NCBI RefSeq assembly: GCF_964204865.1
Contig: NC_135264.1
Span: forward strand, 13,888,001 to 13,952,000
Length of the DNA: 64,000 nt
Direction: 5' to 3'
Source of the DNA: Styela clava
Taxonomy: Eukaryota
Shown: positions 1,241 through 20,962 of the stretch, one piece after another
Layout: the number at the start of each line of letters is the position of its first letter
How positions within the stretch are numbered: position 1 is the stretch's first letter
Position numbers and translations under genes: made by a program
Notes under the pieces: generated by a model
Databases searched by the model: none
Told to the model about the DNA's origin: nothing
What the model saw: the letters and a program-made list of their open reading frames with translations, nothing else

Positions 1241-1823
1241 ATCTACGTTATATACTTCTGATACTATCTAGAAAAATTCAGTGGTCCCAAATACATAGCA
1301 TCAAAAAATCATAATCAGGAACACTGCTTAGCTTACAGAATATTAATGTTAATTATATTAAAAAAGCGCTATTAGGTTACCCTACATTATCTCTATTATT
1401 ATGGACGAAGTATTACTCATTCTTCATTACACAAAATTTGTTGAGTAACGTTATGTTACATTTTCAGCGCTCTTAGACCATTATTTTTTATAACAATAAG
1501 AATATTTTTCTTGGGGCTGATTAATAAAACTAAGCATAAGAAAATATCAGAAAAAAAAATTCAGAATTGAATGAAACGTTCGATAAAAATATCTTGAAAA
1601 TAAAGTACCGGTAATCGTTTGTTGTTGATTGAATAGCAGTGATTTGAAGTCTTTCCAAACTTAATTCGTTAATTTTATTTTAGTATTTGCTTTCTCAAAA
1701 AACAAACAAATTTTTTTCACAATATCCTGTTATACTATAAAAACTATCCAGAATATTAATAAAGCCAAAAATTGTTAAAAATAATATCGCCTAAAAAAAT
1801 TTGAATTTACAAGTAAAACTTAC

Positions 1824-4800
1824 CATGAAATTTTACTCTTCTGTTCTGTTCTTGTGAGCTCAAACTGAGAGGGCTGGGTCCATTGTGCGTATGTCTACGT
1901 GAACGGTTGGGGCTCGGTAACCCTGTGTGCCCGCAAAGCAAAAATTAGTACAATTCACCAACATAAAAAACGGGGTTAGTGTACCACATTAACCACCAGG
2001 AAATCACAAAAATACATTATTGGGGAGGCCGATCAAAATAAAAAAATAAGAATCATGAATAGCAAAACCCAATTCTAACAAACAGATAAGTAAGCTACAA
2101 ATTTATAATAATATATTTTAAATAACTTGCCAAAAAGAAATCACTATTATACTTTATGTGCACCTCAAAAAATAAAATTGCCTTCAATTATAACATGGAA
2201 TTTTGAGAATTTTTAATCAAGATATAAGAAGGAACAAAGAAAATTAATCAAATAGCAATATCTTGGGATATTTTAGAATGGATTTGCACGTTAGTGAGAC
2301 AAATCTAGTTATATATTAGGAACAGAAAAAACCCAATACCGTCCGCTTCTTATTGAGTTTAACACCAGTTTGCAATAAAAAAAAAACACTAAAAAATCTT
2401 ATAAAAGTCATTATAAACTAACACTGCATTACTTTTTCTTCACAATACAAACAATTGGGTGAATTCCAATATTAATTTTTTTTACAACCATATCCGTGAT
2501 TGCGTTTAGCATAGCGATGTCATTGCATTATTTTTATGATAATAGTTAGTTCACAGACGGAATACGATATAATATGGATCTCCGTATTGCTGGACTTATT
2601 TATGATTATCACTATGGAATATGGACATAACACTGCACCACAGTTGTCCTAATTTATAGCGATGTAATAGTATGCTTTTATACCAAAGAAAACTTAACAA
2701 ATGGGACAATTTGTATATTTTGAGAATTATGGATAACAAATTTATTCACAGGATCTGTTCAGATAGGAGTTTTTATTCAATGAAATATGAATGGAAAACC
2801 TAAATAAGTGACATTGAAAATTTTTTGGAATAAAAACGGCAAATTATTTTAGATTTTTCATTTAAACAGATAAAACAATTTTTCGAAGTCAGAGTTCATC
2901 CAAGGTCACAAATTCTTGAGCATCTTCGTACATTGGCCAGACATTGAACAAATATGACATCTATCTTCCATACTTGATTGGTAAATAACTTGCGAGGCAG
3001 ACCCAAAACAATTTCAGTCACGTATTGTTTATAAAGCCTTAACGCAAACGAGAGTATGCATGACTAAATTATTGGGAGAAATGTGATTATGGAAAGTAAA
3101 AAACGCACGAATTGTTGCAAGGAAAGCCTGATTTAATGGTGCACAAACAATAGTGCCATATACAAACAAAAAAACTTTTATTAGGAAATTCACGATTTCT
3201 TGGGCTCAGTAATTCCTATGCCATGTTACATAATTATAATAACAAAAAAGGTATACAAAAAATTGGGCAAAAATAATTGAGAATTTTGAACTAGACAAAC
3301 AATATTAATTGAAGTCAGTTCAAAAAACTAATCAATCAATTTAGGCAGCAGATATTCTATCAAAGAGTATTGAGAAAAGGACTTCTGTCAAGAAGAGTCT
3401 GACAAAAAATTGATTACAATCATACCACCAATCAGACAAAAAGATAGATCGAACAAAGGCAAAAAATAAGTTTAACTCCTATCAAGCTTGGAACAATATA
3501 AATAGACATGGTTATAGTAATCGAAACATTTCATGAACCTGCAAGATGACATGATTTTTCGTTTCATATGAACTCTGTAAGAATTTCATCCTAGACGACT
3601 GAAACGAAAGTGAAACTACGCTATTCAAAGTCATAATAAAACAGTGCTTACAGGATTTTCTTCTTGCTCAGACATGGTACGACTTCTCTCGGAGTGAGCG
3701 AGTTAAATAAAAAATTTCTCTTTTGGACACTTGAAGAAGCATCATAATCATGAATTTCTTTTTTCATAGTCATTAATAAATAATTATAGTTATTATTATG
3801 ACTATTTTGGAGCAGATTAAAAAAAAAATTTTCTCTTCTCAATTATAAAATTATTATTTTTTTTATTCTGACCAAAAGCACTACCACTAAGAACTCAAAC
3901 TCTGAGGGCTAAATAATGTCTTTTATGACTATAGCATCTTGTTTAACTATTTATAAAATGTAAAAATTTTCTTGGAATTTTTAAAATATTTAGCCCATGT
4001 GTATATCTGGAATTTCTTCCACTTTGCGTATCAAAACATTATTAAATATGCAAATGCAAATAGCTACTCATTTCAAAGGATTTGGATGTCTAGTAAATGC
4101 TAAAAAATACTAACCTTTAACCTTATTTCTTAAGCTTCGTCTCGTCTCTTTTCTTGGAACATCCTGATCGGAAAATACTTTCTGTTTTCCTTTCTTACAA
4201 CTATTTCTCTGGCAGGAACAGCTACTAATATCAACTGGTTCTTTGTGACAATCATCAACATTTTCTTCATGACTTCCTTCTGAGAGTCTCTCTATTCCAT
4301 TAGCACAATTTAGAACTGCACTACGTAATTTAGTTCTCTCAATTTTTTTCCTTGTATAACTGTTCTCCTCTTCTAATATAGAGTCTAGTTCTTTCAAAAT
4401 TCTACGAATTCTGACTGAAATACTACAACTGGTATCTTTCTCCATCGTGTTGTCTGCTAAAAAATATTGAGTCAACTATACAACCTCAGATTATCTTTCT
4501 ATTTGAAATTTAGAAAAAAAACTTTCCCAATGATAGATAAATATATTTCAAAGAAATTTGCTCAATGTAAGATCGACCCCCTTTACTTAAAAAGCAAATC
4601 ACTGTATTAGAAAAAGTTAATTCAATTCCTAAATTAAATTTGAACACCGTATACATACAGATTGTTTTGAATCCAACTTTACCTATTGCACAATATTACC
4701 ATAATGAGTGTACATAATAGTAATAAAAAACCACACACAAAAGCCACTTTGGTTGGTAAATATTAGGACAAATGGCACATTATCACCAATAAGAGTAAAG

Positions 4801-7800
4801 TAACTCTGACACCAATACGATTTAAGAGAGCTGATTTCAGTGAGTCAGTTTGGATGAGTGATTTCGAAAACTTAACAGCACCCAATCAAATAATAGTAAA
4901 GGCAGAGATAAAATCAAACAAATCACATATATACCGGTAGATGAAAATGGACCTAATCGAATAACTTTTGACATTATTTGGTGCTACTGTAGCGAGTCTA
5001 GGTCTACCACCGCATAGAGCGAGATGTAACTCAAGATAGCACTTTAGCGTGGGATTTACTTCCCTAATAAAACCCTTTGCTTCTATGCATTTAATTTAGC
5101 AATAAACACTTAATTTGTACATATTTTTGAAATAACTTGGTAATTTTAACTATTATAACGGTATACCTCATAGCCTACTGCATTTGGATAGCCAATATAT
5201 GGTAGTTGTAGTAACGCTATAGCATCCTCCCCTTAGTTTAATATTACAGGTACCAAAATCTTAGGTAATATGAATTCTAATATAATATAAGGACTAAAAA
5301 ATTAAAAAATTAAGACAATAAAACTATGTATTTATGAATGAACCAACTTCAGTAATCAAGAAAAAATCACAATATAAATAATATAATGATTTATTGTATC
5401 ACAAAATCAATCGATAAAATCTGAAAAATTTAAAATCAAATTCTCAAAAAATTGTTGTGGACTTTTCTACATACAATACACAATATAGCCAATACATTCC
5501 CATGCAGTGGACAAGCCTTCTAGGCATTGCTAAAGATTCACTACACCATGCACACATGCGACAAGTGCATTACAAAACAACCCACTACGTTATAAGAAAG
5601 TTTCTAAGTTGCTACGTTATAATGAACTTAAAAAGAGCCACCCCACGATAAGGCAAAATATTCGAATATCAAATGGAATATTGTAATGGCTTTCAGTTTC
5701 AACTATTCAAATATCTGATAACAAGTCAATTTACTTTGACATGGCACTGGAGCTAACATGAGCGAAAGCGCAAGAATTTTCGCAAGACTCTCGCAAGCAG
5801 ACCGAAAGTGAAAAATCTAATATGGTAGTCGTCATCTTTATGATATGGTGTGTCCTTGTCTAATTTCATTGTCAATTTGATATCGTTTAAATTTGTTAAA
5901 AAGAAATAGCAAGCAAATTTAAAAACAAAAGTTTGCGATCAGTTTTGAGAATAATTCAGAAACATCAACAAATTTTGCCTACCCTAGAGATAATTTTTAT
6001 CAATTCAAAATAGGCTATATCGAACTACCAGTAGAAATAACAGCATTCAGGTATAGCTTGCATTAGAATGCGCGAATGATTCATCACCAGAAGAAAAAAA
6101 CAATTTTTTTTGAATCTATTCATAAATATTTTCAGTATATGAATGCATTGTCATTGAAATGGTATTATGGAACTCCATAAGCGCTCATGTGCATGAGTAA
6201 GGATGCCTATATACGGCAATTTAAAGATCTTCAGGACTAATATTAGTTTCTGAACTGTTTTTCCGCCATGTGCTTTTTTTCAATCTTGATTTTTACCACA
6301 AGTATAATATGCAATATACAGGGTGTCCATAAAGTCCCTTTACAATTTCAATTTTGTTATGAAGTCAGTTCTCAATACATATTAACCAGGTTTGTTATTT
6401 TTTAATCAGTAATTGTTTAATAAGTATTTTTTCTTCATTTAGGAGAACCAAAACAAAATATGGTATTGATAAATTCCCTTTGCAATTTTGAAATTTTTTA
6501 AAGACTTTATAGACATCCTATATTACGATATGAAGTGTAAGAAATAGTATTTACACCAAAAATTCCCTCAGTGTCAAATGCAATTCACTGTGACAAAGAA
6601 TCATACTAACTGATAAGAATAAAACAATGTCTCACCTCCTCCTATGTGTGGATTCATGTTTGATGCAGAATTGATATTCCCTGTACTTCTTGCTTGGTTA
6701 TAAAGCATAGAGGCAGGTGTTTGTAATGAACCTCCTTGCTGATTCTGAACAAATAGAGAAAACAACGATGAAGTGACAATAATATTACGATTTTTTCAAT
6801 TAATCAAGGAGACTAGAAACAAGGTTTCTAAGATTGTGCCAGGGTAGTTTGCCCCCTCAATAGGTTGGCAAATGAAACTGAAAATTCATAAAAAATTTCG
6901 CATTTCAAGACTACTAAAGCCAAATTAACTAATCCAAATGCATACTAAATAATATTATTATACATGTAATGCAAAATATATTGTATATTAGAATATGGTC
7001 AACAAATAATTTGGAATGTATTTGAATATTAGATTCATATTAGACAACTCCTTTCAGCTTGGCCCATGCTTTGCTATGAGTTTTTATAGAAAGATGGACT
7101 GAGTAATGTAATGCTATTTCGACTTTTTTCGAGATATCTAGCTCATCAGATCTTCATTGTTATCAAAATAATTTCAAAAACACGGACCATGAAGAATGTG
7201 AATCATCATTTGAGCAGCAAATATAAATATCTGTCCGATAAATAAATACGCAATTGGGAAAACAAGATGCAGTGCAGTGGCCAAATAGTCAAAATAGAAC
7301 ATGATACAACAATTAAAAGCAAAAAAGAAATATATTATGTCAGGCCTCTTCAAATCATTCTTTAGTAAAAAAGTATTATGATGGAGAAGTCCAGAATAAA
7401 GAAATTAAATCTAATCAATTGTATCTGATATTTATACTTTTTAAATGGTCAACTTAGCAGCACAAATAGCAACATTCTGGGACAGATCGAAATGGAACAG
7501 CCAAATTACACAATACTATAAAGAGACATTTTTTTCTAAACCTTTATAACACATATGTATATTCAATACACATTCAATATTTAAATGCTCTAGTTTCAGT
7601 ATATTGTCTTTGGAATCAAAATAATTTCAATTCATATTAAAAGTCAGATTACGGTAAGTTCAACTTTCACATATATCGCTAATATAAACATAGATAAATA
7701 AATATACCTGAGGCATTTGTTTTTGCTGTTCATCATAATCAATTGGATTTGGCAAAGGAGATGGAATATGGAGATTTGTTAAATCTGAAAGAAGTCAAAT

Positions 7801-10800
7801 ATAGTTAGTTAAGCATTAATTTCTTCAATTTAAAATACCATGTATATGGAAGATTGCTCTTAAAGTGAATCAAAAAGAGGAGAGTTAATGAGAGAGTAAT
7901 TAAACCACAGACACATTGACAAATTAACTTTACAAAGTAGAAACTTAAATCAAACTGCTGATAAAGTTAAGTACATAATCAGTCTCACATCAGTCAGTGA
8001 ACCACCAACTTTTATAATATGGACATGAAACTAGCTACCAGTCAGACGTTGAAGACAATACTGTGTATGCCAGCCTTCTTTGATAGAATATTAGGCATGC
8101 ATAGTTAGCTCAATTTTTTTCTATTTCTGTATCAGGACTTTGATCATTGAAACCAATAAAAATGTGAAATTCCGACTCCTAGGTAATCCAGACTCTGGAT
8201 AATTCAAAATTTTGAGTCCGACTGAAATTGGCCAAATTGCCAAACTCTGCCTACACAGCCCTGGTCTGCTCATCAGATCTTCATTATTATCAAGATTATT
8301 TCAAAAACACGGACCATGAAGATATAAGTTCATCATTTGAGCAAATAGAAGGTGATTTTGGAATCATATTATGACAGGGCATGTATTTACTGGAGTTGGA
8401 CCAGGAGTCGTATTTTCAAACTCCCAGAGATAAAGTCGAAATCCTGAATTCCCCAAAGTCAAAATCTCAGGCATCTAACGGTGATAAAGAATGATTGAAT
8501 GATAATTTCATATGACAAAATTTTTTCAAAATTAGATCTTCTCGGAGTTCAAAGTCAAAATTTTGTACAACCAGGAGTTGATTAGAATTTTACGAATCCC
8601 AGTTTGCAATATAGAACATAATTAAAAAATAACAAACATTTCGGTTATGAACCAGTGTAAATGTACTGATATTTCACTTGTAATTCATTCCTCAATGGTC
8701 ATGTTAATTAAGCGTTTTACCTGGCAAAGATCCTGTGTTATTTCCGATCTGAGTAACGTGTGATAGTCCTGGTTGGTTGGTTGGTGTTGGTGGCATTCCT
8801 TGCCTGTGGTTTGTACATTCCGCTGTGTTTTGTAGAACACTGAAAACAAGTAAAGGAATAAGTAATCATTGCTATGATAGGCCATGGTATCAACCAGTTT
8901 TGACCAGTTTCCAAAAGTTTGGTTGAAACCAGAATTTACCGAATTCGTTAAACAATGTTATGGAATTGCTGTGGCCCAAACCCACAACGTATAATTATTG
9001 TAAGAAGGTTGCATTGGGTTAAATCCTGAGCAGAGGAACTTCAGTAAAGCTGATTCCCAACTGTTTGCTCATCAGATCTTCAATATTATCAAGTAATTTC
9101 AAAAACACGGACCATGAAGATAGAGATTCATCATTTGAGCGGATGCAGACGACTCGGGAATTCAAATAATAGAATTTCTGAGTAAATCCTTAGAGATTGT
9201 TTTGAATATGATATATCGGATATCGAATATTTGAAGTAAACATTGTTTTTGTTAACGGTTGAATGAAGTCAATTTTAATGCTTATATTAATATACTTTCA
9301 TATGAAAATATTCTAATTTATTCCCAAATCATAAATTACTTTATCAAACATATCTGAATATTTGATTCGTTTTGGACCTCCCTGGGTCCAGGTATGTCAA
9401 ATTTTGGATTAATTTCTATGAATTTCAAAAGTGTTCAAATATTCGAGTTTTTTTTAGACATCCCCGTAACTTTTTCACAGCATGTAACGCATAGTAGATT
9501 AGTAGGTATACATTTATTACAGCATTTTTCTACAAATGAGGTGCCTCATCATGGGCCATATTTTTAGCGAGTACCTTCAGGCACAATGAGAACTAGCATA
9601 GTGTATTTCCGGTCTGGACAATAGAAAGTAAATAAGTACTCCAAAGTCTGTAACTAATACTTAGGCATATTTACGTTCTGTGGTATTTAGCTGGCTTTAT
9701 CAGATTAAATATTTATTGATGACGTTTAGTTTCGTCATGATGACTATTTAAGGAGTGTCAATAACATTTATGCGCTAAAAATAGAACCCACAAACTTATT
9801 GAAATGCGCATTTTGAGCGGGAAAAAAAACTTCATAGAAAAAATTTCCACCTCACAGGCGACACGAAATGGGAAATTGTATTTAAATTTGCATTTAATAA
9901 CGATATTTGCTGAAATCGTGACATGAAATATTCCTTACCACGAAAACATACTCAAAAGTTCGTAGAAAAATAATATAAACAATAGTAAACATATGTTTAA
10001 TTATAAGTAGGCGGTAGATTCGAATTACTAGTAGAGGTTCAGATAATCTTAATTGTTTTCGTAAATTATATACTCCTTTATATCTTGAAGCTATTCTTCT
10101 TTTAATTCTATAACAGGAAATTTTTACATTTACAATCATTATTATACTCATTTTATTCCGCATTAATTAAAATTGCCAAGTGCAAAAGGAGAGGTACCGG
10201 TAGCTAAATGCATTTATCAGTTGGGGTTACACAAGACTCCCATCCTTCTGCTGTGTCATTAGTGGATTGTATGCATATATTACGAAGATGCTGTAGTAGG
10301 AAAAAAGATGACTATACTATTAAATTTATTAGGAATCTTGTTGTAAACTTCTTGTCCAAGGAAAGACGTTATAAAAATACATTTGTGTTAGTGTGCAGCA
10401 AGACTCTACACATACTATCAATACATTTATGATGTGTAAATATGAAGTCCAAATAACTCACCCCATATGAGAATCTTCACATGATTTAGGTCCATTAGGA
10501 GCTTGTAAATGTTGATGAAATTTCTCAGCATCCAGAACTGATTTAGACATCGATGTATCCATCAAATCTGAAGAAATGATCGAAATTTGTGTCAAATATA
10601 TAAATGTGTTGATGAGAATAAATGAACATAATTGCTGACCCTCCATACAGGGTTACATAAAACACTGCTTTCCAAAACTACAATACATAACACATGTTGA
10701 GATTTTAGCACTTTTCCGCCCTTCCCACCCAAGGAGAAGAAAATTGATATAATGACTTAATCACATAGTAAACCACATACTTTAATTTGGTTGTAAGTCC

Positions 10801-13800
10801 AAGTTGGATATGTAAATGCTTATTATTCCAAATACATAGACTTTTGAGTTGACTAAATTTTGTAGCCGCAAAAATGAAATTTCTAAATACTATTGTAGCA
10901 AGGTAGCCAATCCATTGGGATGTTAGTACCTGTACTGGCAATAAAATATCGTTTCATCATCGATACATATTAAGTAGATAAGATTCGGCCCTGCCAAACA
11001 CAGCTTAATATTATTAAGGCTGCTTGCTCCTTTTCATAAACATCATAAACGAAATTTTTTTTTGATGAAAGACTTGAAAAGTGTACATATGAATCCTTTT
11101 GCTAAATTGTTGTTAATTGAAAAAAATCATTTTCAACTATTGGACCAATTGATTTCAATTTTTCAGTTATCCGTACTTAATAGGCCACCATAAGACTGAT
11201 TACTCTTATTTCTTCAAATTTCTCTGAACAGTATTCATGGCCTATGGAAAGGAAACTCTTCATTTTGTTATGCTTGTCTACTGAGCTTTTGAACAAAATC
11301 TGTGCTCAGGTAATGCCTTAGAGCAGAGTTCCCAAACTTTTCCTTGTTTGTTTATCTTATTTTTGACGGACCCCCCAAGGGTCAACCTGTATTTTGTCAT
11401 CCTATTGGTAAGAGCTGAAAATGCTGCCTAATACATGTGTGTCATTACAAAAAGCAATAAAATTTTATTGTCTTCACTGACAGCAATTGATACCAGGATT
11501 CGCCCACAACCAAAAAGACCCAATGGCTTTTTGATTAGAATCAATCATTAAAAATCGATCAGACTCTTTTCATATTGTTGCGCACTCCTGGTGCAGTCAT
11601 CACGAACCCCAGTTTGGGAGACCCTGCCTTAGAGTACCAGCGTGCAACCTTCGTGTCCACATATTTTGAGCATTGCTCTCTCGTTTAAAAATAAAATTCA
11701 ATTCACCTCTTCTGGGTTGTTGAGGCATCGCTGATAAATGTCCAGGAACATTGTTGAAATTGGAGAAAGGTGCTTGCGAGTTTGGATTCATCACACTCTG
11801 ATGTAACGCTGAATCCGAGTTCGTCCTAGACAGGGCAAAACTATCGTTTCACACATGCCCATATAGAGGTTTACGGGGGTTGGGGGCGTGGTCAGGATGG
11901 AGCGGGTGGGGTCACAATAGGTTAGTAAGCAATGTATAGTTATTTTAAATTGAGGGTCAAAGGTCGAATTAAGGATAATTTTTTCATAAAAGTTTAAGAC
12001 AATTTACCACAATAAAATGTATTTATATTATAATAACACAAATGCATGTTGCGACATTTAAAATCAAAACACAGAATATGTGATCCGTTTAAAATTAGAT
12101 TAAACATGCAAATTTTTGAATTTAATAAAAAACAAAAAATTGACCAATTTTAAGTAATTATTTCACATTTGTTTTTTGAGTTGGAATAGTCATCAAATTA
12201 TGATAACATCAATTTAGTATTTGACAAAACAATTATAAATCAGCCACCAGAGTTAGTTCAAACAAAAACGTTTAACAACAAATACAAAGCATGATGTAAA
12301 TGGTTCGTGGAATTAAGACATTACGAGCAAAATTATGTGACCGAATGAATTTTGACAAGGGTGAGACAGGGTTGGTGACCAGGTGGGTGATAATTAGGGG
12401 TGCAGGTTTGCAAGCGGGTGCAGGTACGGGCAGGCAATGATGACGACACGCAAAATAGAAAGCAAAATAAAGCATGTGTAAGTTAGATTGTAAAATTAAG
12501 CAAGCAAAACAATCATATTAAACTACCAACGAACTACAAGCATTCACTACACAACTAAATAGAAGTGATGTCCAGATATGCATTTAGCATAATAAAAAAT
12601 TTGGATTAAAAAATACTGCAAATTCATATTTATAACCATGATAATGAATTTTTGAAATTTAAAAATAACCAAACTGATAAAATTGTGGTAATTTTAGAAA
12701 TTCAATAACTGTTTTGAGTTCTAGAATATTGTGCTAGACAAATTTGCAATCTTGCGACAATAATATTTTGTACGCTCTGGCATATATTCTTCAATAACAC
12801 AAAATAAATTTAGAATCGAAATCGAAAATGATGATTATCAGAAAGCTATATCAACAACCAATGACTACATAACATGAAACATTAATCTGATTTTCCGAAA
12901 GATGGTAACAGCCCTAATAATCATGCAAAAGAAACCACTGGACAAAACTGCTATAAAGCAAATAAACATTAATAAACACTATATTGATTTTCTACTACTA
13001 TTTAGTATATAGCTTTAGTATATACAGAATCACCATTCCGTCTTAATTGAACATAGATTTGGAATCAACTTGTGTAAGAAAGATACCTGTGTATAGGAAG
13101 AAAGTGAACTCTAAAGATATATTAATAGTTTTTTGCATTTTTTCAAGTTTGAAACAATTAAAAACATACTATATAATATCTAGTAAATAAGATTGTAATT
13201 TAATTGATATATTGTTTGAATTTGTCATACCTTTTTATGTTCCATTATTACAAGACACAATACTAGTAAAATCAATAAAATTGTTTACATAACGATTACT
13301 GTATAAAATAGAATTTATGGTGATTAGGAAAATGCTGAGTGCACAAATAAAGCATTTATGTATCAATATTCTATGAGAATGTGCAAACAATACTGCATAC
13401 AAGAATAGGGAAAGAATGTTCGTCAACTCTTGATCCGGTAAAAATTTATCCTATAGTTTAGTACTGCAAAATTTTTGGTCCCCTTTTTGAGAACGATTTA
13501 GCGAATTTTGTTTCAAGGAGATTCGAGCAACTTCAGTGAAAATATGTTGACAGCTAGTTTTAGCCTATTCAATCCAAGCTTTTTCATTTATTCTGAAGAA
13601 GAATTTATCCTAAAACTTTGATTTATATTTATATTCATGAGACATGACTGAGACTGCAAAATGAAAGTCAAAGTCAATTTCATTTTATAAATTATATGCA
13701 GTACTTCTAATACAAATAGCGTTATTTTAGCCAATACTTAATTAACAATCAACATTTAACAAAGCGGGCTATATTACAATTTTGTTGCAAATAGATACAT

Positions 13801-16800
13801 TTATTGAAATCAGATTTTTGAAAGATGAGATAATTTATATACCGGTTTATGCATGATAATTTCTAGTCGGAGAGAAAACTTGATAGTGAATCTTGATCCT
13901 CCTCCCCGTAAAAAAAGAGGTTTTCGTAACCAGTTGACATAATCAGTTAGTTAATTCTTCCTAATAACCATAAAAAATTACCATAAAATTTCCATTATAA
14001 TCTGGCAATTTTTTTTTTTTTCATGATTTAACACCCGATGATAAGAATAACAAATTTGAAACCTAATCTAGAATAAATTAAATTCAGTGGCATTAGGGCC
14101 AAAAAAATCCCATAAAACACAATATGGGGTATACTTGACATAGTTTTGAATTTATAGCGTGATAAAATATACACAAGTCTTAATGAATGCATTAAGCCCG
14201 TAATAATCGATAGAGTCATCCATGCATACAATACAAAAAGGGTTGAGGGCATAGATAGATAAATCATTTTTTACAAAATGGAAAAATGGAGAATTTGTGT
14301 CCCGAAAAATCACTATTTCTTATCAAGGCAATCTTTCGAAACTTAAATAAACTAGAAATTTTGTTTTATTCTTAGAGTAATGAATTGATGATATAACTCA
14401 TTTTATAAAATTTGAAATGAATAATAATGGAATTGAACGCTTTGCAGATAGATTTATTAAGCGTCTTATCCCAAACTACAATTAATTGTTACATGTAAAT
14501 ATATGCCAGTATGTTCAGATTAATAGAAATTTTGTCTTATTCGTAGAGTAGTAAATAGATGGTATAACTCATTTTATAATATTTGAAATAAATAACAATG
14601 GAATGGAACGCTTTGCATAAAGAAGTATAATCGTCTTATCCTGAAGGACAATCGTTTCATGTAAAATATATACCAGTATGTCAGACTTCAAAAATATCCA
14701 AAACACGATAACTAGAGCCCAAATTCTTTATCCTAGATATGTTAAATTGATTCAGTCCAAAACAGTTCAAGAGCATATAATCTAAATCTATTCATTTTTA
14801 ATGAAGCGTTGAATGCAAATTAGAATTTATGTAAAATCGCACATCTGGCATCATAAATGAAGGGCGTGAAATATTCACAATCAAAAAATATCATATAAAA
14901 TCTTTTTGAAACTGAAACAGTATGTGTAAGGATTATATTGTTTCTAAAATACTCTTCAGTACATTGAAAATCAACGTTGCACATAAGATATTCTGGTAGC
15001 GACAGAATTTAAATAATACATGCAAATCTAAGCTATAAACGCCAGACTCGCGATGCGCTTAGTGGTAATAAGATATGCAATGAAATCAATACATTATATG
15101 ATTGATTTCTGTCTAAAAAAAGCTAAAAGACAGTTTTTTAAACGCTTATTATAGGATATTTCTGCAACATAACGTTTACTGATTTACATTTACAGATGAG
15201 TAATTAGGGTAATTAAACAATGATATTTTAATTGTAACAAGAGCATATGAGCATTGTAACAAATTGTATATGTTACAGATGAAATTCTCTATCATAATAT
15301 ATATATATATATATATATAAATATTATATTGATATTAGTATAATACTCTTATCAAGAAATAAATGTTTTTTAAAATACCGACTGTAGAAAAATTTATTAT
15401 AGTATAAAATTCATTTTCGATAAAGTAAATTTTACGTGATGACAGATTTTTAAATCGATTGGATCACAAATCATAAATTGCATTCTTTGGACATTTATTT
15501 TTATGCCATTATATTATCAAGGCAAGGTGCTAATTTAGGAATTGGAAGCATTATAAGTATTTGAGATAAAAATAAAACATTCTATTCTTCAACTAAATCT
15601 AAACTATATTATGATTCGAATATTTTTTCGATTTAGACAGATTCAAATATTGGAGGTAGCTTTCTTTGTTTCAACCTAATGGTTGTTTAATAATATACTC
15701 CAAATCATACAACATAAAGCAGTGAGCACCTATCTTAACCGAAGTCTTTTGGGAATACGACGATGTCAAACCAGAATGGTGCACAATGTCATAAAATAAA
15801 TTAAGCTATTTGGACACCTAGATATACAGGGTGTCCATGAAGTCCCTTTACAATTTCAATTTTGTTATGAAGTCAGTTCTCAATATATCTTAACCGGGTT
15901 AGTTGTTTTTTCAATCAGTGAATGTTAAAGTATTTTTACCTTTTTAATACTTCTGTGAGGCCAAAACAATATATGAAATTGACAACTTCCCTTTGCACTT
16001 TTTAATTTTTTTTTTTTAAGAATTCATGGACGCCTTATATATATGTATGTTTATATTATAATTTTAAAACGAATAGATTATACAAAAAAACTCATTATTT
16101 GGAAATACCAGTAACTCTCACAGAATTTAGAACATACAAAAAAAATAGAACCTAGATTACGGATTATGCAGTACTTCAAATTAACTCTTTATTCGGTCAA
16201 TGACCACAAAGCAATAAAATGATGACTCATGTCACGTTGAACACATCATGTTCACATTGTTAAAACAAGTTTTCTATTTTGAATACATTTTGGAGCATAT
16301 TTTATTATAAAAAGGTTTGTTTTTATCATAAATAATATTTTAGAATATCAAAAATAAGTATTCTATTTTAAATACATTTTCCAAATCAAGTATATTATTA
16401 GAAAACCAGAGATATTCTACTCAGTGCTGCAGAAAAGTTAGGTAAATCATTATTTGATTTATTTTATTTTTAAGAATTTCTCAAAAACAAAATACTAAAT
16501 CATTCATAAATACAGAAAATAACCAATACCGAATGTATTGAAGTATTTGATCCATTTAGATATATCCAATGCAGTAACGCTTTTGTATAAATTGTTCCAT
16601 TGGCATAGTTCTGAACAAACTAGATGAAGTAATGTTGAACTCCAAAAGATGTATCTGTTTTGAACTGTGCTAAGGATGCGTAAATCTTATAATTAGGAAT
16701 ATTATCTACCTCATCAAATGTAATGTAATTAATTGACTTAATTATGATGTTTAAATGTAAGCTTAACAATGATAGATCGAACCTCTTAACATTGCAAAGA

Positions 16801-19800
16801 ATTAAATGTTATATTCCAGATCTAAATGATTAAATATTTTATAATACTTTGTTGTATTAATCAATTTGGTGTAATAAAAGTTAACTTTACAATATGAAAA
16901 GTTGATAACTTGACACAGAGAAATTTGGAAATTTCCTCAACTGAAATGTCACATAATTCTATAATAATATATGTGACAATGATATTCCTTAGGAATCCAA
17001 TTTTTGTTACTGATTTTGAATTTAGAATGGCTTAGGACTGCAGTATTGAACTGAATCATATAAGTGATGAGAACATGTTGTAACACACGTATGAATGATA
17101 CAACGTAATTTAGATGTGTAAATGCGAACGGACAAAAAAATTAACTTGATAAATTATATTTAAACTTGATTCACTTCAAAGATTAAGAAGGTAAATCTGT
17201 TTTCCAATAAAATTTTAGTGCTTTTTTATGACGATTTTGGAGAAAAAAAACAAACAACATTTAGGCTATTTGGAATCAAAATTAATTGCAATGTTGAATT
17301 TAAAAAAAAACATCTATTCTGATTCATAGACGAAACACAAACACGCTAATAGTTCCAAGTAACATTGCCAAAAAGCCTCCATACAATGTTTGAAAGAAAA
17401 TCAACAACTTCTATTGCTATCAAAGTTGCTCACATTAAAATCTATCACTAATGTCATGTTAGATACCTCAACATAAAATAATTAGGTTACACCATAATTT
17501 GGCTTTGCTAACTTTAAAAAACATTCGAAGGATTTGATATTACTTTCGAATTTAAAATAAAAACACTGACATTTAATTACTACTACAATTTATACCTGGA
17601 CAAAACTGCTAGCCATAATTTTTATGATTTTCATTATACAGTTCAACAACAAAGAAACACGAACTTAAACAAATTATTTCAAATCAAGACTGAAATTAAC
17701 ACAAGCATATTCAATTAACTCTACATACAATAATGTTATGTTGTGACTACGATTATACAACTACAAGACTAGCAAGCAGATGAAACTGATCAAATGCCAA
17801 AGCAATCTACGTATGAATACAATACAATTACTACATGTACCTTCTCCAACTGGTATCGGCAGGAGGTGACAAATAGGGCCCGCTATACGGCCCACCGGGC
17901 ATTCCTTCAACGTGACGAGGATGTCGGTTCTGAAAATCTGGCCTCCTATACGGCCTTGGACGAGAGTCAAAGCGCACTTGGTGGCGCATATGTGGTGGCT
18001 TAAAATCCTCATACATGCCCTGAAAAAAATCATAAAACAGAAAATTGAAACTATAAATCAGAATAATGTACTAGCATGCAAGTCATCTCACAAGATGCAA
18101 CCTATTGTCAACCACTTCATATAAAATTTGTGAATTGAACAGACTTTTGAACTGAATTTTCTCCCAATTTGAAGACACTATATGTTTTGTGTTGAGCATA
18201 TATCCAATTTCCACAAAGCATTACAATAATGATAATATCTGCCATTTTACAATCTATAAATTCTCTATCGAATTCTCTGATATTACTCGACCCTGTTGTT
18301 TATTTGTAACAAATATGAGCTAATTGTTAGTTACTCTAGCTGAAAAATAGTTCTAGGATCAATTTCCTGAATCTCACTCCTGCAAACTTTATAGAAGAGT
18401 ACATGCTTGGTCTGGTCTATTACAATTTGATCAATTTGAAAATGAAATCAGTAAATCGTGACTTTCCAGAACAACACCATGTTAACCAAACACAGTGATG
18501 ATGTCAATCACGCTTCATTGATTAAAAGTTAAAATGAGTTAAAACTAATTCAAGAAGATTGACCTATACCTTAACATCAAATGTCCAGTCACAAAAAAAT
18601 GAGAACTTCTGACTTACCTGTCGCATCTGCATTTCCATCGGTGGTCCAGACATTTGATTAACATTTGGTAAAGATCCTCCAAGATATGAAGGCCTGAGAA
18701 ATGCTTGTGGATGGGGATGGAGACGTTGAGGTTGCTGAAAAGCAAAGAGGTCACATGATTAAATAGTTGGGAATTGTAAAACCATGCCCAAGATCTGCAA
18801 AGACTGTGCGATATTTGCCATTATAATATTATGACATGTAGTGGTAGTCGTTTTTAAATTGCACATATTTCCAGTTTATTGTGAAGCTCTATTTCGCGTT
18901 TTTTGCAATAAATTGAGAGACCATGGCAGTCTAGTAATAAATGGATTCTAATACATTGTTATAACTGCCGTCATGAAACTTTAAAATGTCAAACAAAACA
19001 ACAAAACGAATCGTGAAAATCCTACACACTATTAAGTGCGTATTTAATAGTTATTATTAGCTGTTGAGTAGCTCCCCAGGTTCAAGTAAAATATATCTAT
19101 GAATAATGAAAAAATACAACATTTGTCCCTAAAACGAGGACATTTGGGTACAGTGGCAAATCTTCAAGATATCATTATGTTTGCAGCAATAAGTATCTCT
19201 ACGGACAATGAATGTTATGCGAACGAAACTAATTCTCATCGATCGTTTCTTGATCACAGAGGTAATTTTTTCCCTGTGGAACATATCGAAAATTTAATTG
19301 CGACATTTTAAGATTTCAGCTAATTGTTTTTGCTAAAGATCTTGAACGCTACGGTAATTTTTTTTCAAGGAATCTAACGGTGACGTTTATAGACTTCTTT
19401 TCCTTTCAGTTTATTGTGCAGTACCAATTTGAAAATTTGTGGCGATATGGAGGCTCCACACTGTCTCCTAAAGAAAGATAGGGTTTGCATCCACTGTTAT
19501 AATTATTGTCTTCAAATATAGGGGTTATTGTTACGTACTGAATGAGTTTTTTTTAGTCTATTGCACAATACCAGATTGCTGATTTTGTTACGATATGGAT
19601 AGGTACATGTTGCCAGACTGTCCTGCAAAGAAGGGGTTTGTATTCATCATTATATTGAATGTCTGAAATATAGGGGTTATTATCAGAATAAAAGAATAGT
19701 GCTATCCTGTATTGTGCGGGTATATTTCATGATTTCCATGACAATGTGCAATCCCAGAATCTTTCAGTTTTGTAAGTAGTGTAATGGGTTGAACAATTGC

Positions 19801-20845
19801 GAGGGTCTTGCAAAAATTTACCAGCTACGGACAGCCCGATAGAGTCGGAGAGTAGTAAGCCAAAACGGGTCTAGTATAGTTTAGTACCACAGGTACTTCC
19901 AGCGGGCGTAGCATAACGAATTTTGCATATGTTATTCCTAACCCCCACCTGTCTATGTCATCCAAAAATTACGTCACTGCGACGTCGCCATCACGTCATA
20001 GGTCTTGCCAAAGTATAATTACGATCGGCCGAAATGACATCTGCGCCGCCGATAACGAACTCGCTAAAGCCGGCGAACTCTCTCCTATCGTGATCGTTGT
20101 GACGAGAAAACGAGAGATAGCTTGCTCGATTTCGGGTGCTCGTCTGCGCGTTTTGGACGACCATTCGCATACTTTGGTGGGCATTATTACGCCACTGTGA
20201 CGTCGAAATGACGTAATTTTTGGGTGACGTAGTCAGGTGAGGGTTAGGATTGACATATGCAAAAATTGTTGAGCAAGGTCAACTAGAAGTGCATGTGGTA
20301 CTAAACTATACCAGACCCGCCAAAACGCAGATTGGCAGAGTTAAACAATCTTCTTGAAACAATAACTGCAGTACTGTATCATCATAAGAATTGATAAACT
20401 TTGACAGCGTAGTGAAACTGAGACCGACCAATGCAAACATGTAATACATTGTGTCAATATATTTAAAATCAGAGACTAATACAGCAATATCGCCGTTTAT
20501 TTGTATTTCAAGTGTAATCAAATGTAAAAAAAAATTGAAAGGTGTAAGAATTAATGACCTCTGCGCTAGATCGAATACATTCGGGGTCTGCGTGCCCGAT
20601 TTGGCAATAGTACTGTAGTAAAACAACTACAGATATTGCCATTATTTTCATGGGCGTGCTGATTTTGCGTTTTTTCGCCAAAACAAACGATGAAAAATGA
20701 TGAAATATCCATTAAACGTAATTAAACTTGTGCTTACCCTTGTAACAGAAACTTCTTGCATAATCCTTTCAAAAGCAGCCGTTTCCTCGGCTTGCTTTTG
20801 ATTGTGTAAAGCAATTTTTTCCGAAAATTTTCGGGGATTCGCCAT
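1824..20845 (-). CDS. CRTC1: CREB-regulated transcription coactivator (CRTC/TORC), 5' nine coding exons; gene continues beyond the left edge
   Basis: Phase-consistent GT-AG exons: 20845-20738 ([45 protein letters not shown]-binding helix), 18734-18618 ([11 protein letters not shown]), 18019-17841 ([11 protein letters not shown]), 11825-11707 ([18 protein letters not shown] site), 10567-10462 (GPKSCE), 8839-8721 (NNTGSLP), 7784-7708 ([16 protein letters not shown]), 6744-6636, 1922-1824 ([13 protein letters not shown]). Probably the single pro-orthologue of CRTC1/2/3. Confidence 0.95.
6319..6520. mobile_element. Tc1/mariner-like MITE
   Basis: TA-CAGGGTGTCCATAAAGTC ... GACTTTATAGACATCCTA-TA; close copy at 15827-16037. 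Confidence 0.7.
7141..7215 (-). ncRNA. SNORD18: Box C/D snoRNA, U18/SNORD18-like, copy 1 (CRTC intron 7)
   Basis: Minus strand reads GCTCA-A-ATGATGA(C box)...CTTCATGGTCCGTGTTT-TTGA(D')...TGATAA(C')...GAT-CTGA(D)-TGAGC. Terminal stem GCTCA/TGAGC. The 12-nt guide is complementary to the conserved LSU rRNA segment AAACACGGACCA. Confidence 0.88.
8267..8343 (-). ncRNA. SNORD18: Box C/D snoRNA, U18/SNORD18-like, copy 2 (CRTC intron 6)
   Basis: Same C, D', C', D boxes and identical guide TGGTCCGTGTTT; terminal stem TGCTCA/TGAGCA; only the spacers differ from copy 1. Confidence 0.88.
9067..9140 (-). ncRNA. SNORD18: Box C/D snoRNA, U18/SNORD18-like, copy 3 (CRTC intron 5)
   Basis: Same boxes, identical guide and GCTCA/TGAGC terminal stem; flanking intron sequence is unrelated to copies 1 and 2. 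Confidence 0.88.
10265..10406. repeat. Degenerate copy of the same repeat (ribozyme core deleted), again with an inverted partial segment
   Basis: GATGCTGTAG segment plus AAATACATTTGTGTTAGTGTGCAGCAAGACTC. Confidence 0.6.
11324..11626. mobile_element. hAT-like MITE
   Basis: TIRs CAGAGTTCCCAAACT / AGTTTGGGAGACCCTG with perfect 8-bp TSD CCTTAGAG. Confidence 0.8.
11843..12523 (-). promoter_or_regulatory. Very long AG-exclusion zone with branch-point motifs upstream of CRTC exon 4
   Basis: No CT dinucleotide on the plus strand (no AG on the transcript strand) between 11843 and 12523. CTAAC at ~12482-12486 is followed by a pyrimidine tract; ACTAAC at ~12252-12257; perfect TACTAAC at 11921-11927. 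Confidence 0.8.
14353..14686. repeat. Diverged ~170-bp tandem duplication in CRTC intron 3
   Basis: TAGAAATTTTGT..TATAACTCATTTTATAA..GAACGCTTTGCA..CGTCTTATCC..CCAGTATGT occurs at 14353 and again at 14524. Confidence 0.8.
15827..16037. mobile_element. Tc1/mariner-like MITE (same family as 6319-6520)
   Basis: TA-CAGGGTGTCCATGAAGTCCCTTTACAATTTCAATTTTG... matches the 6319 copy. Confidence 0.7.
19921..20264. mobile_element. GC-rich foldback/MITE-like element with ~65-bp inverted ends in CRTC intron 1
   Basis: TTTTGCATATGTTATTCCTAACCCCCACCTGTCTATGTCATCCAAAAATTACGTCA is mirrored by TGACGTAATTTTTGGGTGACGTAGTCAGGTGAGGGTTAGGATTGACATATGCAAAA. Confidence 0.7.
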
Positions 20846-20889
20846 CTTTATCAGCCGACCTCGCAAACGATGATGCCAGAATGAAGCGC

Positions 20890-20962
20890 CGGCCAATCAG
20901 TGAGCGTAGTGTTTATCACGTGACTATAGAAAATCACAAACAGATATTATCAATTCCGCGAG
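20890..20962 (-). promoter_or_regulatory. Putative CRTC proximal promoter
   Basis: CpG-rich patch directly upstream of the ATG, with CCAAT (20893-20897), E-box TCACGTGAC (20916-20924) and a TCTCGCGGA motif (minus strand, ~20954-20962). Confidence 0.45.

What the first reader, a model, noticed from the sequence alone, without database searches (positions are those of the whole stretch)
7141..9140. CRTC acts as a snoRNA host: three U18-like C/D snoRNAs, one per consecutive intron
Three ~75-nt copies (7141-7215, 8267-8343, 9067-9140) lie sense to CRTC in introns 7, 6 and 5. Boxes, terminal stem, an internal TCTTCA/TGAAGA stem and the guide UGGUCCGUGUUU are invariant while spacers and flanks diverge, which indicates selection rather than transposon copying. 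The guide pairs with LSU rRNA GAAACACGGACCA, and the +5 rule points to the A methylated by U18 (yeast 25S Am649 and its vertebrate equivalent). Known U18 hosts are translation genes (RPL4 in vertebrates, EFB1 in yeast). A cAMP/Ca2+-signalling coactivator as host would be an unusual host switch linking CRTC transcription to rRNA modification. All three share a non-canonical D' box (UUGA), suggesting intron-to-intron duplication after one insertion.
Basis: partly seen in the sequence, partly recalled or inferred. Interest (0 to 1): 0.75.

Follow-up and report, generated by a model that had tools for sequence, protein, structure and literature searches.

The report
U18 snoRNA genes in CRTC introns
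Three real copies of the ancient U18 guide RNA, which directs one methylation of large-subunit ribosomal RNA, sit one per intron in the sea squirt Styela clava's CRTC gene, but this is one of three host genes for U18 in this genome and host changes for U18 turn out to be common.

Summary
Rfam's SNORD18 model finds three full-length matches above its cut-off at 9068-9139, 8269-8341 and 7142-7214, all on the minus strand. The genome is Styela clava. NCBI's CRTC1-like protein maps to nine exons in the window. Spliced RNA contigs from 4 of 4 runs give exact GT..AG junctions, placing one snoRNA in each of coding introns 5, 6 and 7, sense to CRTC. The 12-nt guide matches this genome's own LSU rRNA. 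Only spacers vary between the copies, and the flanks are at random level.

The "unusual host switch" reading is only partly supported. The genome holds exactly 13 U18 copies. The other ten lie in two duplicated SAPS-domain (PP6-regulator-like) genes. RPL4 has few introns here and carries none. All 13 copies share the UUGA-type D' box. Environmental eukaryote contigs carry similar U18 arrays in RPL4, RPS4 and an SNF2 ATPase gene. This is a new host for a known snoRNA, most likely as a passenger. The mature RNA and the methylation were not shown.

The parts
9067..9140 (-). U18/SNORD18 copy in CRTC coding intron 5 (74 nt). Box C 9128-9134, guide 9103-9114, D' UUGA 9099-9102, C' 9085-9091, box D 9072-9075, terminal stem GCUCA/UGAGC at the two ends.
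   Evidence: Rfam RF00093 55.2 bits at 9068-9139. Sequence and elements. Terminal stem -7.7 kcal/mol.
8268..8342 (-). U18/SNORD18 copy in CRTC coding intron 6 (75 nt)
   Evidence: Rfam 54.1 bits at 8269-8341. Terminal stem -10.3 kcal/mol. Covered only by a low-depth intronic contig in 1 of 4 runs.
7141..7215 (-). U18/SNORD18 copy in CRTC coding intron 7 (75 nt)
   Evidence: Rfam 49.7 bits at 7142-7214. Terminal stem -7.9 kcal/mol. Low-depth intronic contigs cover it fully in 1 run (X5) and partly in 1 run (X1).
8840..10461 (-). CRTC coding intron 5 (1622 nt); snoRNA 3' end lies 227 nt from the 3' splice site
   Evidence: Joint 8839|10462 with CT..AC ends (GT..AG on the minus strand) in 4 of 4 runs. 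Distances.
7785..8720 (-). CRTC coding intron 6 (936 nt); snoRNA 3' end lies 483 nt from the 3' splice site
   Evidence: Joint 7784|8721 in 4 of 4 runs.
6745..7707 (-). CRTC coding intron 7 (963 nt); snoRNA 3' end lies 396 nt from the 3' splice site
   Evidence: Joint 6744|7708 in 4 of 4 runs.
20738..20845 (-). CRTC coding exon 1 (TORC_N, CREB-binding N terminus)
   Evidence: Pfam TORC_N E 9.9e-22. 100% to residues 1-36 of P0123, the S. clava CRTC1-like protein.
18618..18734 (-). CRTC coding exon 2 (borders approximate)
   Evidence: tblastn of P0123 residues 31-75. Not checked with reads.
17843..18022 (-). CRTC coding exon 3
   Evidence: tblastn residues 75-136. Its 3' border at 17843 comes from the loose end of spliced contigs placed in the window.
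11707..11842 (-). CRTC coding exon 4 (start of TORC_M)
   Evidence: Pfam TORC_M E 6.2e-9. Joints; tblastn.
10462..10567 (-). CRTC coding exon 5
   Evidence: Joints 8839|10462 and 10567|11707 in 4 of 4 runs. 100% to P0123 residues 180-215.
8721..8839 (-). CRTC coding exon 6
7708..7784 (-). CRTC coding exon 7 (TORC_M)
   Evidence: Pfam TORC_M E 4.4e-5.
6635..6744 (-). CRTC coding exon 8
1822..1921 (-). CRTC coding exon 9 (5' border from reads, 3' border approximate). The rest of the gene lies beyond the window start.
   Evidence: Loose end of the spliced contigs maps to 1892-1921. tblastn residues 317-350.

Best explanation
These are three functional genes for the box C/D snoRNA U18 (SNORD18) of Styela clava, carried as passengers in coding introns 5, 6 and 7 of the CRTC1-like gene.

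Inferred mechanism: the CRTC pre-mRNA is transcribed and spliced. On the excised or nascent intron, the box C/D core proteins assemble on the kink-turn formed by boxes C and D next to the 5-bp terminal stem. Exonucleases then trim to that stem and leave a 74-75-nt RNA. Its 12-nt guide upstream of D' pairs with LSU rRNA at AAACACGGACCA and directs 2'-O-methylation of the A fifth from D' (AAAC-A-CGG). This is the site homologous to human 28S Am1313 and yeast 25S Am647/649.

Inferred history: one U18 copy, related to the 'type 2' copies in the SAPS-domain genes, came to lie in CRTC and was copied twice into neighbouring introns at the DNA level. The vertebrate host RPL4 keeps few introns in this species and carries none. 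CRTC supplies 3 of the genome's 13 U18 genes.

Shown here: identity, boxes, stems, guide-target match, host, strand, intron borders, host expression and splicing, copy census, clade structure. Inferred: processing, RNP assembly, methylation, direction and mechanism of copying.
For: SNORD18 model matches above cut-off, full length, x3. Box, stem and guide elements are invariant while spacers vary and flanks are at shuffled level. Terminal stems are predicted in 13 of 13 copies (-3.3 to -10.3 kcal/mol). Their sequences differ between subfamilies (GCUCA/UGAGC, UACUC/GAGUA, CUGCU/AGCAG) but still pair. The target 13-mer is present about 1070 times in arrays spaced about 10 kb apart (reversed control 5). 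Two such places scanned are LSU rRNA (1233 and 982 bits), with context tgaaacacggaccaagg. Host identity rests on TORC_N and TORC_M and P0123, 'CREB-regulated transcription coactivator 1-like isoform X1 [Styela clava]'. GT..AG joints around all three introns appear in 4 of 4 runs from 3 studies. The census gives 13 copies, all sense to a host. The CRTC trio is one clade at 94/100 and groups with SAPS type 2 at 99/100. RPL4 shows two large coding exons and no snoRNA at E<=0.1 in 10 kb. U18 and its target are ancient (PMC3511168 table, passages; PMC2655684, passages).
Against: No mature ~75-nt RNA was seen. The runs were long-RNA contigs, the bin holding the intron-5 copy had depth 0 in 4 of 4 runs, and the other two copies were covered only by depth 3-7 intronic contigs. 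The snoRNAs lie 227-483 nt from the 3' splice site, well beyond the ~70-80 nt that I recall as optimal for splicing-dependent box C/D assembly in vertebrates, so processing efficiency is unknown. D' is UUGA, not CUGA. The tree is unrooted and rests on 85 columns, so the direction of transfer (SAPS to CRTC or the reverse) is not shown. The methylation itself is untested.
Confidence: 0.85

Rival explanations
1. The CRTC copies are silent or redundant duplicates. U18 is supplied by the ten copies in the SAPS-domain genes, and the CRTC trio is poorly processed because it lies far from the 3' splice sites.
For: Ten of 13 copies lie elsewhere. Distances of 227-483 nt to the 3' splice site. No mature RNA seen.
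Against: In the trio, 63 of 75 columns are invariant and every change falls in a spacer, while 100-nt flanks are at shuffled level. Neutral copies that old would have lost boxes or guide. All three score above the Rfam cut-off and keep a terminal stem.
Confidence: 0.08
2. The placement is functional coupling rather than a passenger arrangement. Either U18 output, and so methylation at this site, follows CRTC transcription, or the intronic snoRNPs affect CRTC splicing.
For: Three consecutive introns of one signalling gene are occupied. A listed paper reports intronic snoRNAs regulating host splicing (PMC10324135, search listing and abstract start only).
Against: Two other host genes carry ten copies, so supply is not tied to CRTC. 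U18 occupies unrelated hosts in other eukaryotes (RPL4, RPS4, an SNF2 ATPase), which fits opportunistic hosting. No complementarity to host introns was looked for.
Confidence: 0.06
3. The units are fragments of a dispersed repeat or transposon that happen to resemble U18.
For: This genome has retrotransposon tails that mimic box C/D snoRNAs according to earlier scan notes (unchecked).
Against: Only 13 copies in 377 Mb, all at three gene loci and all sense to the host. Flanks are unrelated. No poly(A) tail or extended repeat is visible in the flanks shown. The guide matches rRNA perfectly.
Confidence: 0.01

Closest known systems
Human SNORD18A/B/C (U18) in RPL4 introns
   Same: Same Rfam family with the same guide core UGGUCCGUGUUU in the model consensus. 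Three isoforms sit in different introns of one host pre-mRNA (PMC3035437, passages). The target is the homologous LSU A (PMC3511168 table).
   Different: The host is CRTC (plus two SAPS-domain genes), not RPL4. There is no U16 neighbour (no other Rfam match at gathering score in the window). D' is UUGA instead of CUGA. The copies lie farther from the 3' splice site.
Yeast U18 (snR18) in the EFB1 intron (host recalled from memory, not checked)
   Same: Intronic U18 guiding the homologous 25S Am (Am647 in the table of PMC3511168).
   Different: A single copy in a translation-factor host, against three to five copies per host here.
Environmental U18 arrays found here (organisms unknown)
   Same: SNORD18 above cut-off with the UUGA D' box, usually two or more copies in successive introns and sense to the host.
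   Different: Their hosts are RPL4 (L028, L032, L061, L064), RPS4 (L033/L041/L048, L053, L056, L060) or an SNF2-family split ATPase (L058, L027, L026, L042, L047). None of the 30 loci tested matched CRTC or the SAPS locus.
Trichoplax adhaerens U18
   Same: Conserved guide and homologous target. The authors state the putative hosts are not conserved with human (PMC2655684, passages).

Membership tests
SNORD18 / U18 (Rfam RF00093) | Covariance-model score at or above the gathering score (41 bits), full length | tested here: met
   55.2, 54.1 and 49.7 bits, model positions 1-71 of 71, for 3 of 3 units.
SNORD18 / U18 (Rfam RF00093) | Guide complementary to the LSU rRNA site, ending at D', so that the fifth paired nucleotide is the conserved A | tested here: met
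   12 of 12 nt pair with AAACACGGACCA in this genome's LSU rRNA. The guide is identical to the model consensus. The fifth position falls on the A of AAAC-A-CGG, read from the sequence.
Box C/D snoRNA | Box C (RUGAUGA) near the 5' end and box D (CUGA) near the 3' end, joined by a short terminal stem | tested here: met
   AUGAUGA and CUGA are invariant. The 5-bp stem GCUCA/UGAGC folds at -7.7 to -10.3 kcal/mol.
Box C/D snoRNA | Canonical internal D' box (CUGA) | tested here: not met
   UUGA in 3 of 3 CRTC copies and 12 of 13 genome-wide. That degenerate D' boxes are common in eukaryotic snoRNAs is recalled, not tested. Environmental U18 genes share UUGA.
Box C/D snoRNA | Stable ~70-80-nt nucleolar RNA bound by fibrillarin, Nop56, Nop58 and Snu13; target nucleotide 2'-O-methylated | not testable with these tools
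   Only long-RNA contigs were available and they show no mature form. Needs small-RNA-seq, RIP and RiboMeth-seq.
Intronic snoRNA of animals | One snoRNA per intron, sense to an expressed, spliced host | tested here: met
   GT..AG joints flank each host intron in 4 of 4 runs. Both the snoRNAs and CRTC are on the minus strand.
Intronic snoRNA of animals | Position about 70-80 nt upstream of the 3' splice site (vertebrate rule, recalled) | tested here: not met
   227, 483 and 396 nt.
CRTC / TORC coactivators (host gene) | TORC_N CREB-binding domain and TORC_M region | tested here: met
   PF12884 E 9.9e-22; PF12885 E 6.2e-9 and 4.4e-5. NCBI names the protein CRTC1-like. TORC_C lies outside the window and was not tested.

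The most novel reading that the evidence does not exclude
U18 is an unusually mobile, dosage-hungry snoRNA that has repeatedly been captured by unrelated, broadly expressed genes and then amplified intron-to-intron. The hosts seen here are RPL4, RPS4, an SRCAP-like SNF2 ATPase, and in Styela CRTC and PP6-regulator (SAPS) genes. In ascidians the move was forced by loss of the RPL4 introns that housed it. As a result, methylation of this conserved LSU A in Styela now depends on transcription of signalling genes rather than of the translation apparatus.
Probability: 0.2. Interest if true: 0.5.

Novelty: new member of a known kind. Interest (0 to 1): 0.3.

Why it matters
It adds a clean, read-supported case to the picture of snoRNA host turnover. 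An LSU methylation guide traced back to the last eukaryotic common ancestor has left its vertebrate host RPL4 in a tunicate and now sits in a CREB coactivator gene and two phosphatase-regulator genes, with three to five copies per host. Together with the environmental RPS4- and SNF2-hosted arrays, it suggests that the one-copy-per-intron array, rather than the identity of the host, is the conserved feature of U18 genomics. It does not by itself show any regulatory link between CRTC signalling and ribosome modification.

Tried and rejected
Relatives.

The CRTC exon-1 search gave 581 proteins at E<=0.001, but mostly short fragments. Only P0123 was useful.

Genome habit. SNORD24 gave 1 match and SNORD15 gave 0, with only 59 and 48 candidates scored. 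This says nothing firm about whether multi-copy arrays are general in this genome.

The count of structure pairs was not used because MAFFT put the 5' stem arm out of register between subfamilies. Stems were computed copy by copy instead.

Exons were searched singly, and NCBI's own protein, returned, was mapped instead.

Literature. Searches returned 3, 18, 416, 4 and 10 papers. In the listing, no title or abstract start concerns CRTC as a snoRNA host; those papers were not read. One search found no paper on S. clava snoRNA hosts. Supplements are closed, so the Trichoplax supplement (host genes) and the Didemnum supplement (SNORD18 loci) may hold relevant details that I could not see. I expect NCBI's automatic annotation of S. 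clava already labels these loci as U18. This is my assumption and was not checked.

A transposon origin is rejected by the census.
Full report
OBSERVATION. The window was scanned against all of Rfam at gathering thresholds. It gives exactly three matches, all to SNORD18 (RF00093, cut-off 41 bits), all on the minus strand and all covering model positions 1-71 of 71. They lie at 9068-9139 (55.2 bits), 8269-8341 (54.1) and 7142-7214 (49.7).

Read from the sequence, each unit is GCUCA-AA-UGAUGA (stem, box C), a 7-nt spacer, UCUUCA, the guide UGGUCCGUGUUU, UUGA (D'), a 7-8-nt spacer, UGAUAA (C'), a 3-nt spacer, UGAAGA-U, CUGA (box D) and UGAGC (stem). Across the trio, 63 of 75 columns are invariant, and the 12 variable columns all lie in the three spacers. 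The 100 nt on either side are 54-58% alike after global alignment, the same as shuffled flanks (means 55-57, sd about 3). The repeat finder sees nothing shared between the three introns except the unit itself.

HOST. Exon-sized minus-strand ORFs on both sides hit TORC_N (E 9.9e-22, window 20651-20896) and TORC_M (E 6.2e-9 at 11603-11848; E 4.4e-5 at 7663-7794). A search of exon 1 alone against 1.84 billion representatives returned P0123, 645 aa and 100% identical over the exon. Its sources name it 'CREB-regulated transcription coactivator 1-like isoform X1 [Styela clava]'.

Mapping that protein on the window gives nine coding exons covering residues 1-350. The rest of the gene lies beyond the window start.

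The species call also rests on RPL4. Its large exon is 100% identical to NCBI's S. clava uL4-like protein, on a contig of exactly the length of this genome's C10.

READS. Four runs from three studies, all kept as Logan contigs and labelled 'RNA?' as a guess, were laid on 6400-12000. In 4 of 4 runs one contig shows the joints 6744|7708, 7784|8721, 8839|10462 and 10567|11707. All have CT..AC ends on the plus strand, which is GT..AG on the minus strand. The runs are therefore RNA, the gene is expressed and spliced on the minus strand, and the intron borders are exact.

The loose ends of these contigs map to 1892-1921 and 17843-17872, which fixes the neighbouring introns at 1922-6634 and 11843-17842. 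Each snoRNA lies inside one of three consecutive introns, coding introns 5, 6 and 7, on the sense strand.

What the reads do not show is the mature snoRNA. The bin with the intron-5 copy has depth 0 in 4 of 4 runs. The other two copies are covered only by intronic contigs of depth 3-7, against 40-362 for the exon contig. Contigs cannot show ends or levels in any case.

TARGET. The 13-mer GAAACACGGACCA occurs 1070 times in the genome (504 forward, 566 reverse; reversed control 0 and 5), in arrays spaced about 10-11 kb apart. Two of these places were scanned and both are eukaryotic LSU rRNA (1233 and 982 bits), one of them next to 5.8S. The local context is tgaaacacggaccaagg.

The guide pairs over 12 nt, and the fifth nucleotide from D' faces the A of AAAC-A-CGG. 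The guide is identical to the consensus of the Rfam model. U18's target is listed as human Am1313, yeast Am647 and Arabidopsis Am660, and is traced to the last eukaryotic common ancestor (PMC3511168, table passage). It is also conserved in Trichoplax (PMC2655684, passages).

THE REST OF THE GENOME. The Rfam model finds 13 matches above cut-off in the 377-Mb assembly. Three are here, five are at C6:1178386-1181659 (minus) and five are at C6:14187101-14190831 (plus). Only 60 of about 72,000 first-look candidates were scored in that search, so I closed the census with exact patterns. Guide+UUGA gives 12 places. Box C, then 8-25 nt, then the guide gives 13. These are the same 13 places, and the reversed controls gave 0.

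The two C6 loci carry SAPS-domain exons (PF04499, E 3.4e-13, 6e-9, 1.9e-4) on the same strand as the snoRNAs. They are collinear at 73-90% identity including introns, so they are an inverted segmental duplication of a PP6-regulator-like gene that already held five copies. Whether the ten copies are truly intronic there rests on ORFs only, because no reads were laid on those loci.

RPL4 (C10) consists of two large coding exons in the 10 kb fetched, with one intron of about 3.2 kb between them. That stretch has no snoRNA match at E<=0.1. Isoform X2 has 23 further N-terminal residues that I did not place.

RELATIONSHIPS. The 13 copies fall into three subfamilies:
- The CRTC type has 3 copies, 84-91% alike.
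- SAPS type 1 has 6 copies, 91-96% alike.
- SAPS type 2 has 4 copies, 89-95% alike.

The order of types along both SAPS genes is 1,1,2,1,2. In a maximum-likelihood tree the CRTC trio is one clade (94/100), and CRTC plus type 2 separate from type 1 at 99/100. That fits one arrival in CRTC followed by two intron-to-intron duplications. Because both sides of the deepest split occur in the SAPS gene, it hints that SAPS is the older host. The tree is unrooted and rests on 85 columns, so the direction is an inference.

Terminal stems are predicted for 13 of 13 copies. They differ in sequence between subfamilies yet still pair, which argues for selection on the structure in each lineage. One SAPS copy (L014:8836-8906) has D' UUAA and the weakest stem (-3.3 kcal/mol).

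IS THE HOST UNUSUAL? In human, RPL4 hosts U16 and three U18 isoforms in different introns (PMC3035437, passages). Outside vertebrates the host is known not to be conserved (Trichoplax, PMC2655684). In the tunicate Didemnum, two SNORD18 copies were found by homology, and hosts are not discussed in the passages I read (PMC8704543).

Since genomes of related sea squirts could not be fetched, I scanned the metagenome collection once for box C..guide+UUGA, which gave 41 loci. Eleven were left aside unread: nine named human-gut and two long contigs, all with the same 42-nt span.
- Of the 30 loci scanned with Rfam, 16 carry SNORD18 above cut-off, 27 matches in all, often two per locus.
- In L028, L032, L061 and L064 the neighbouring exons are RPL4 (tblastn down to E 1e-22; Pfam weak).
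- In L033/L041/L048 (one contig with four copies), L053, L056 and L060 they are ribosomal protein S4 (Ribosomal_S4e E 3.1e-20, 40S_S4_C, KOW).
- In L058, L027, L026, L042 and L047 they belong to an SNF2-family ATPase with a split ATPase domain (SNF2-rel_dom E 9e-30, Helicase_C E 1.9e-14). The SRCAP/Swr1 likeness of this gene is my reading and was not tested.
- None of the 30 matched CRTC or the SAPS locus. The organisms are unknown.

So RPL4 hosting reaches beyond vertebrates, which makes the Styela state look derived. U18 has also taken other hosts, including one outside translation, and it usually occurs as one-per-intron arrays. The UUGA D' box is neither specific to CRTC nor to Styela.

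VERDICT. The emphasis on CRTC as a special link between signalling and rRNA modification is not supported. CRTC holds 3 of 13 copies, two other non-translation genes hold the rest, and host turnover for this snoRNA is widespread. A passenger arrangement is the most likely explanation. This is a new host, and a tidy example, for a known family.

The main gaps are the mature RNA, the methylation itself, and the state in other tunicates. Earlier scan notes (unchecked) list other multi-copy intronic C/D families in this genome, in MYBBP1A, TPGS1 and hnRNP R/Q. I did not test them.

Noticed in passing
G000 C6:1178386-1181659 (L013) and C6:14187101-14190831 (L014/L016): Two SAPS-domain (PP6-regulator-like) loci lie 13 Mb apart in opposite orientation. 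They are collinear at 73-90% identity including introns. Each carries five U18 copies in the same order of subtypes (1,1,2,1,2), so this is a segmental duplication of a snoRNA host gene.
   Followed up: partly
L014:8836-8906: One SAPS-hosted U18 copy has D' UUAA instead of UUGA and the weakest terminal stem of the 13 (-3.3 kcal/mol). It may be decaying.
   Followed up: no
G000 C10:11202000-11211999 (L018): S. clava RPL4 has only two large coding exons in this stretch (residues 24-109 and 107-393 of P0001), with one intron of about 3.2 kb and no snoRNA. This is far fewer introns than the vertebrate gene that hosts U16 and U18.
   Followed up: partly
L033/L041/L048, L053, L056, L060; L058, L027, L026, L042, L047; L028, L032, L061, L064: Environmental eukaryote contigs carry U18 arrays with the same UUGA D' box in introns of RPS4, of an SNF2-family split ATPase, and of RPL4. 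L026 also has a SNORA26 match (41.3 bits, cut-off 40) on the same strand, about 2.6 kb upstream of the nearest SNF2-gene exon I identified.
   Followed up: partly
window 7596-7630: A 35-nt stretch in CRTC intron 7 is 77% like part of the U18 unit, including a 16-nt exact AT-rich match to the intron-7 copy. It is either a relic of a further local duplication or chance.
   Followed up: no
window 8194-8264: One low-depth RNA-run contig (run X2) skips 71 nt directly beside the intron-6 snoRNA, with TC..GG ends. This is probably an indel allele of the intron rather than splicing.
   Followed up: no
window 6448-6488 and about 10366-10407: Two short stretches inside CRTC introns have very high summed contig depth and many different loose ends in all four runs. 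Similar ORF fragments recur elsewhere in the window (15800-15925) and on C6. They look like expressed dispersed repeats.
   Followed up: no
window 4113-4475 (minus strand): A 121-aa open frame inside the 4.7-kb CRTC intron 8 has no Pfam match.
   Followed up: no
L016:4835-4996: A sub-threshold Rfam match to the plant MIR5048 family (60 bits against a cut-off of 160), downstream of the SAPS locus. Most likely a repeat, not a microRNA.
   Followed up: no
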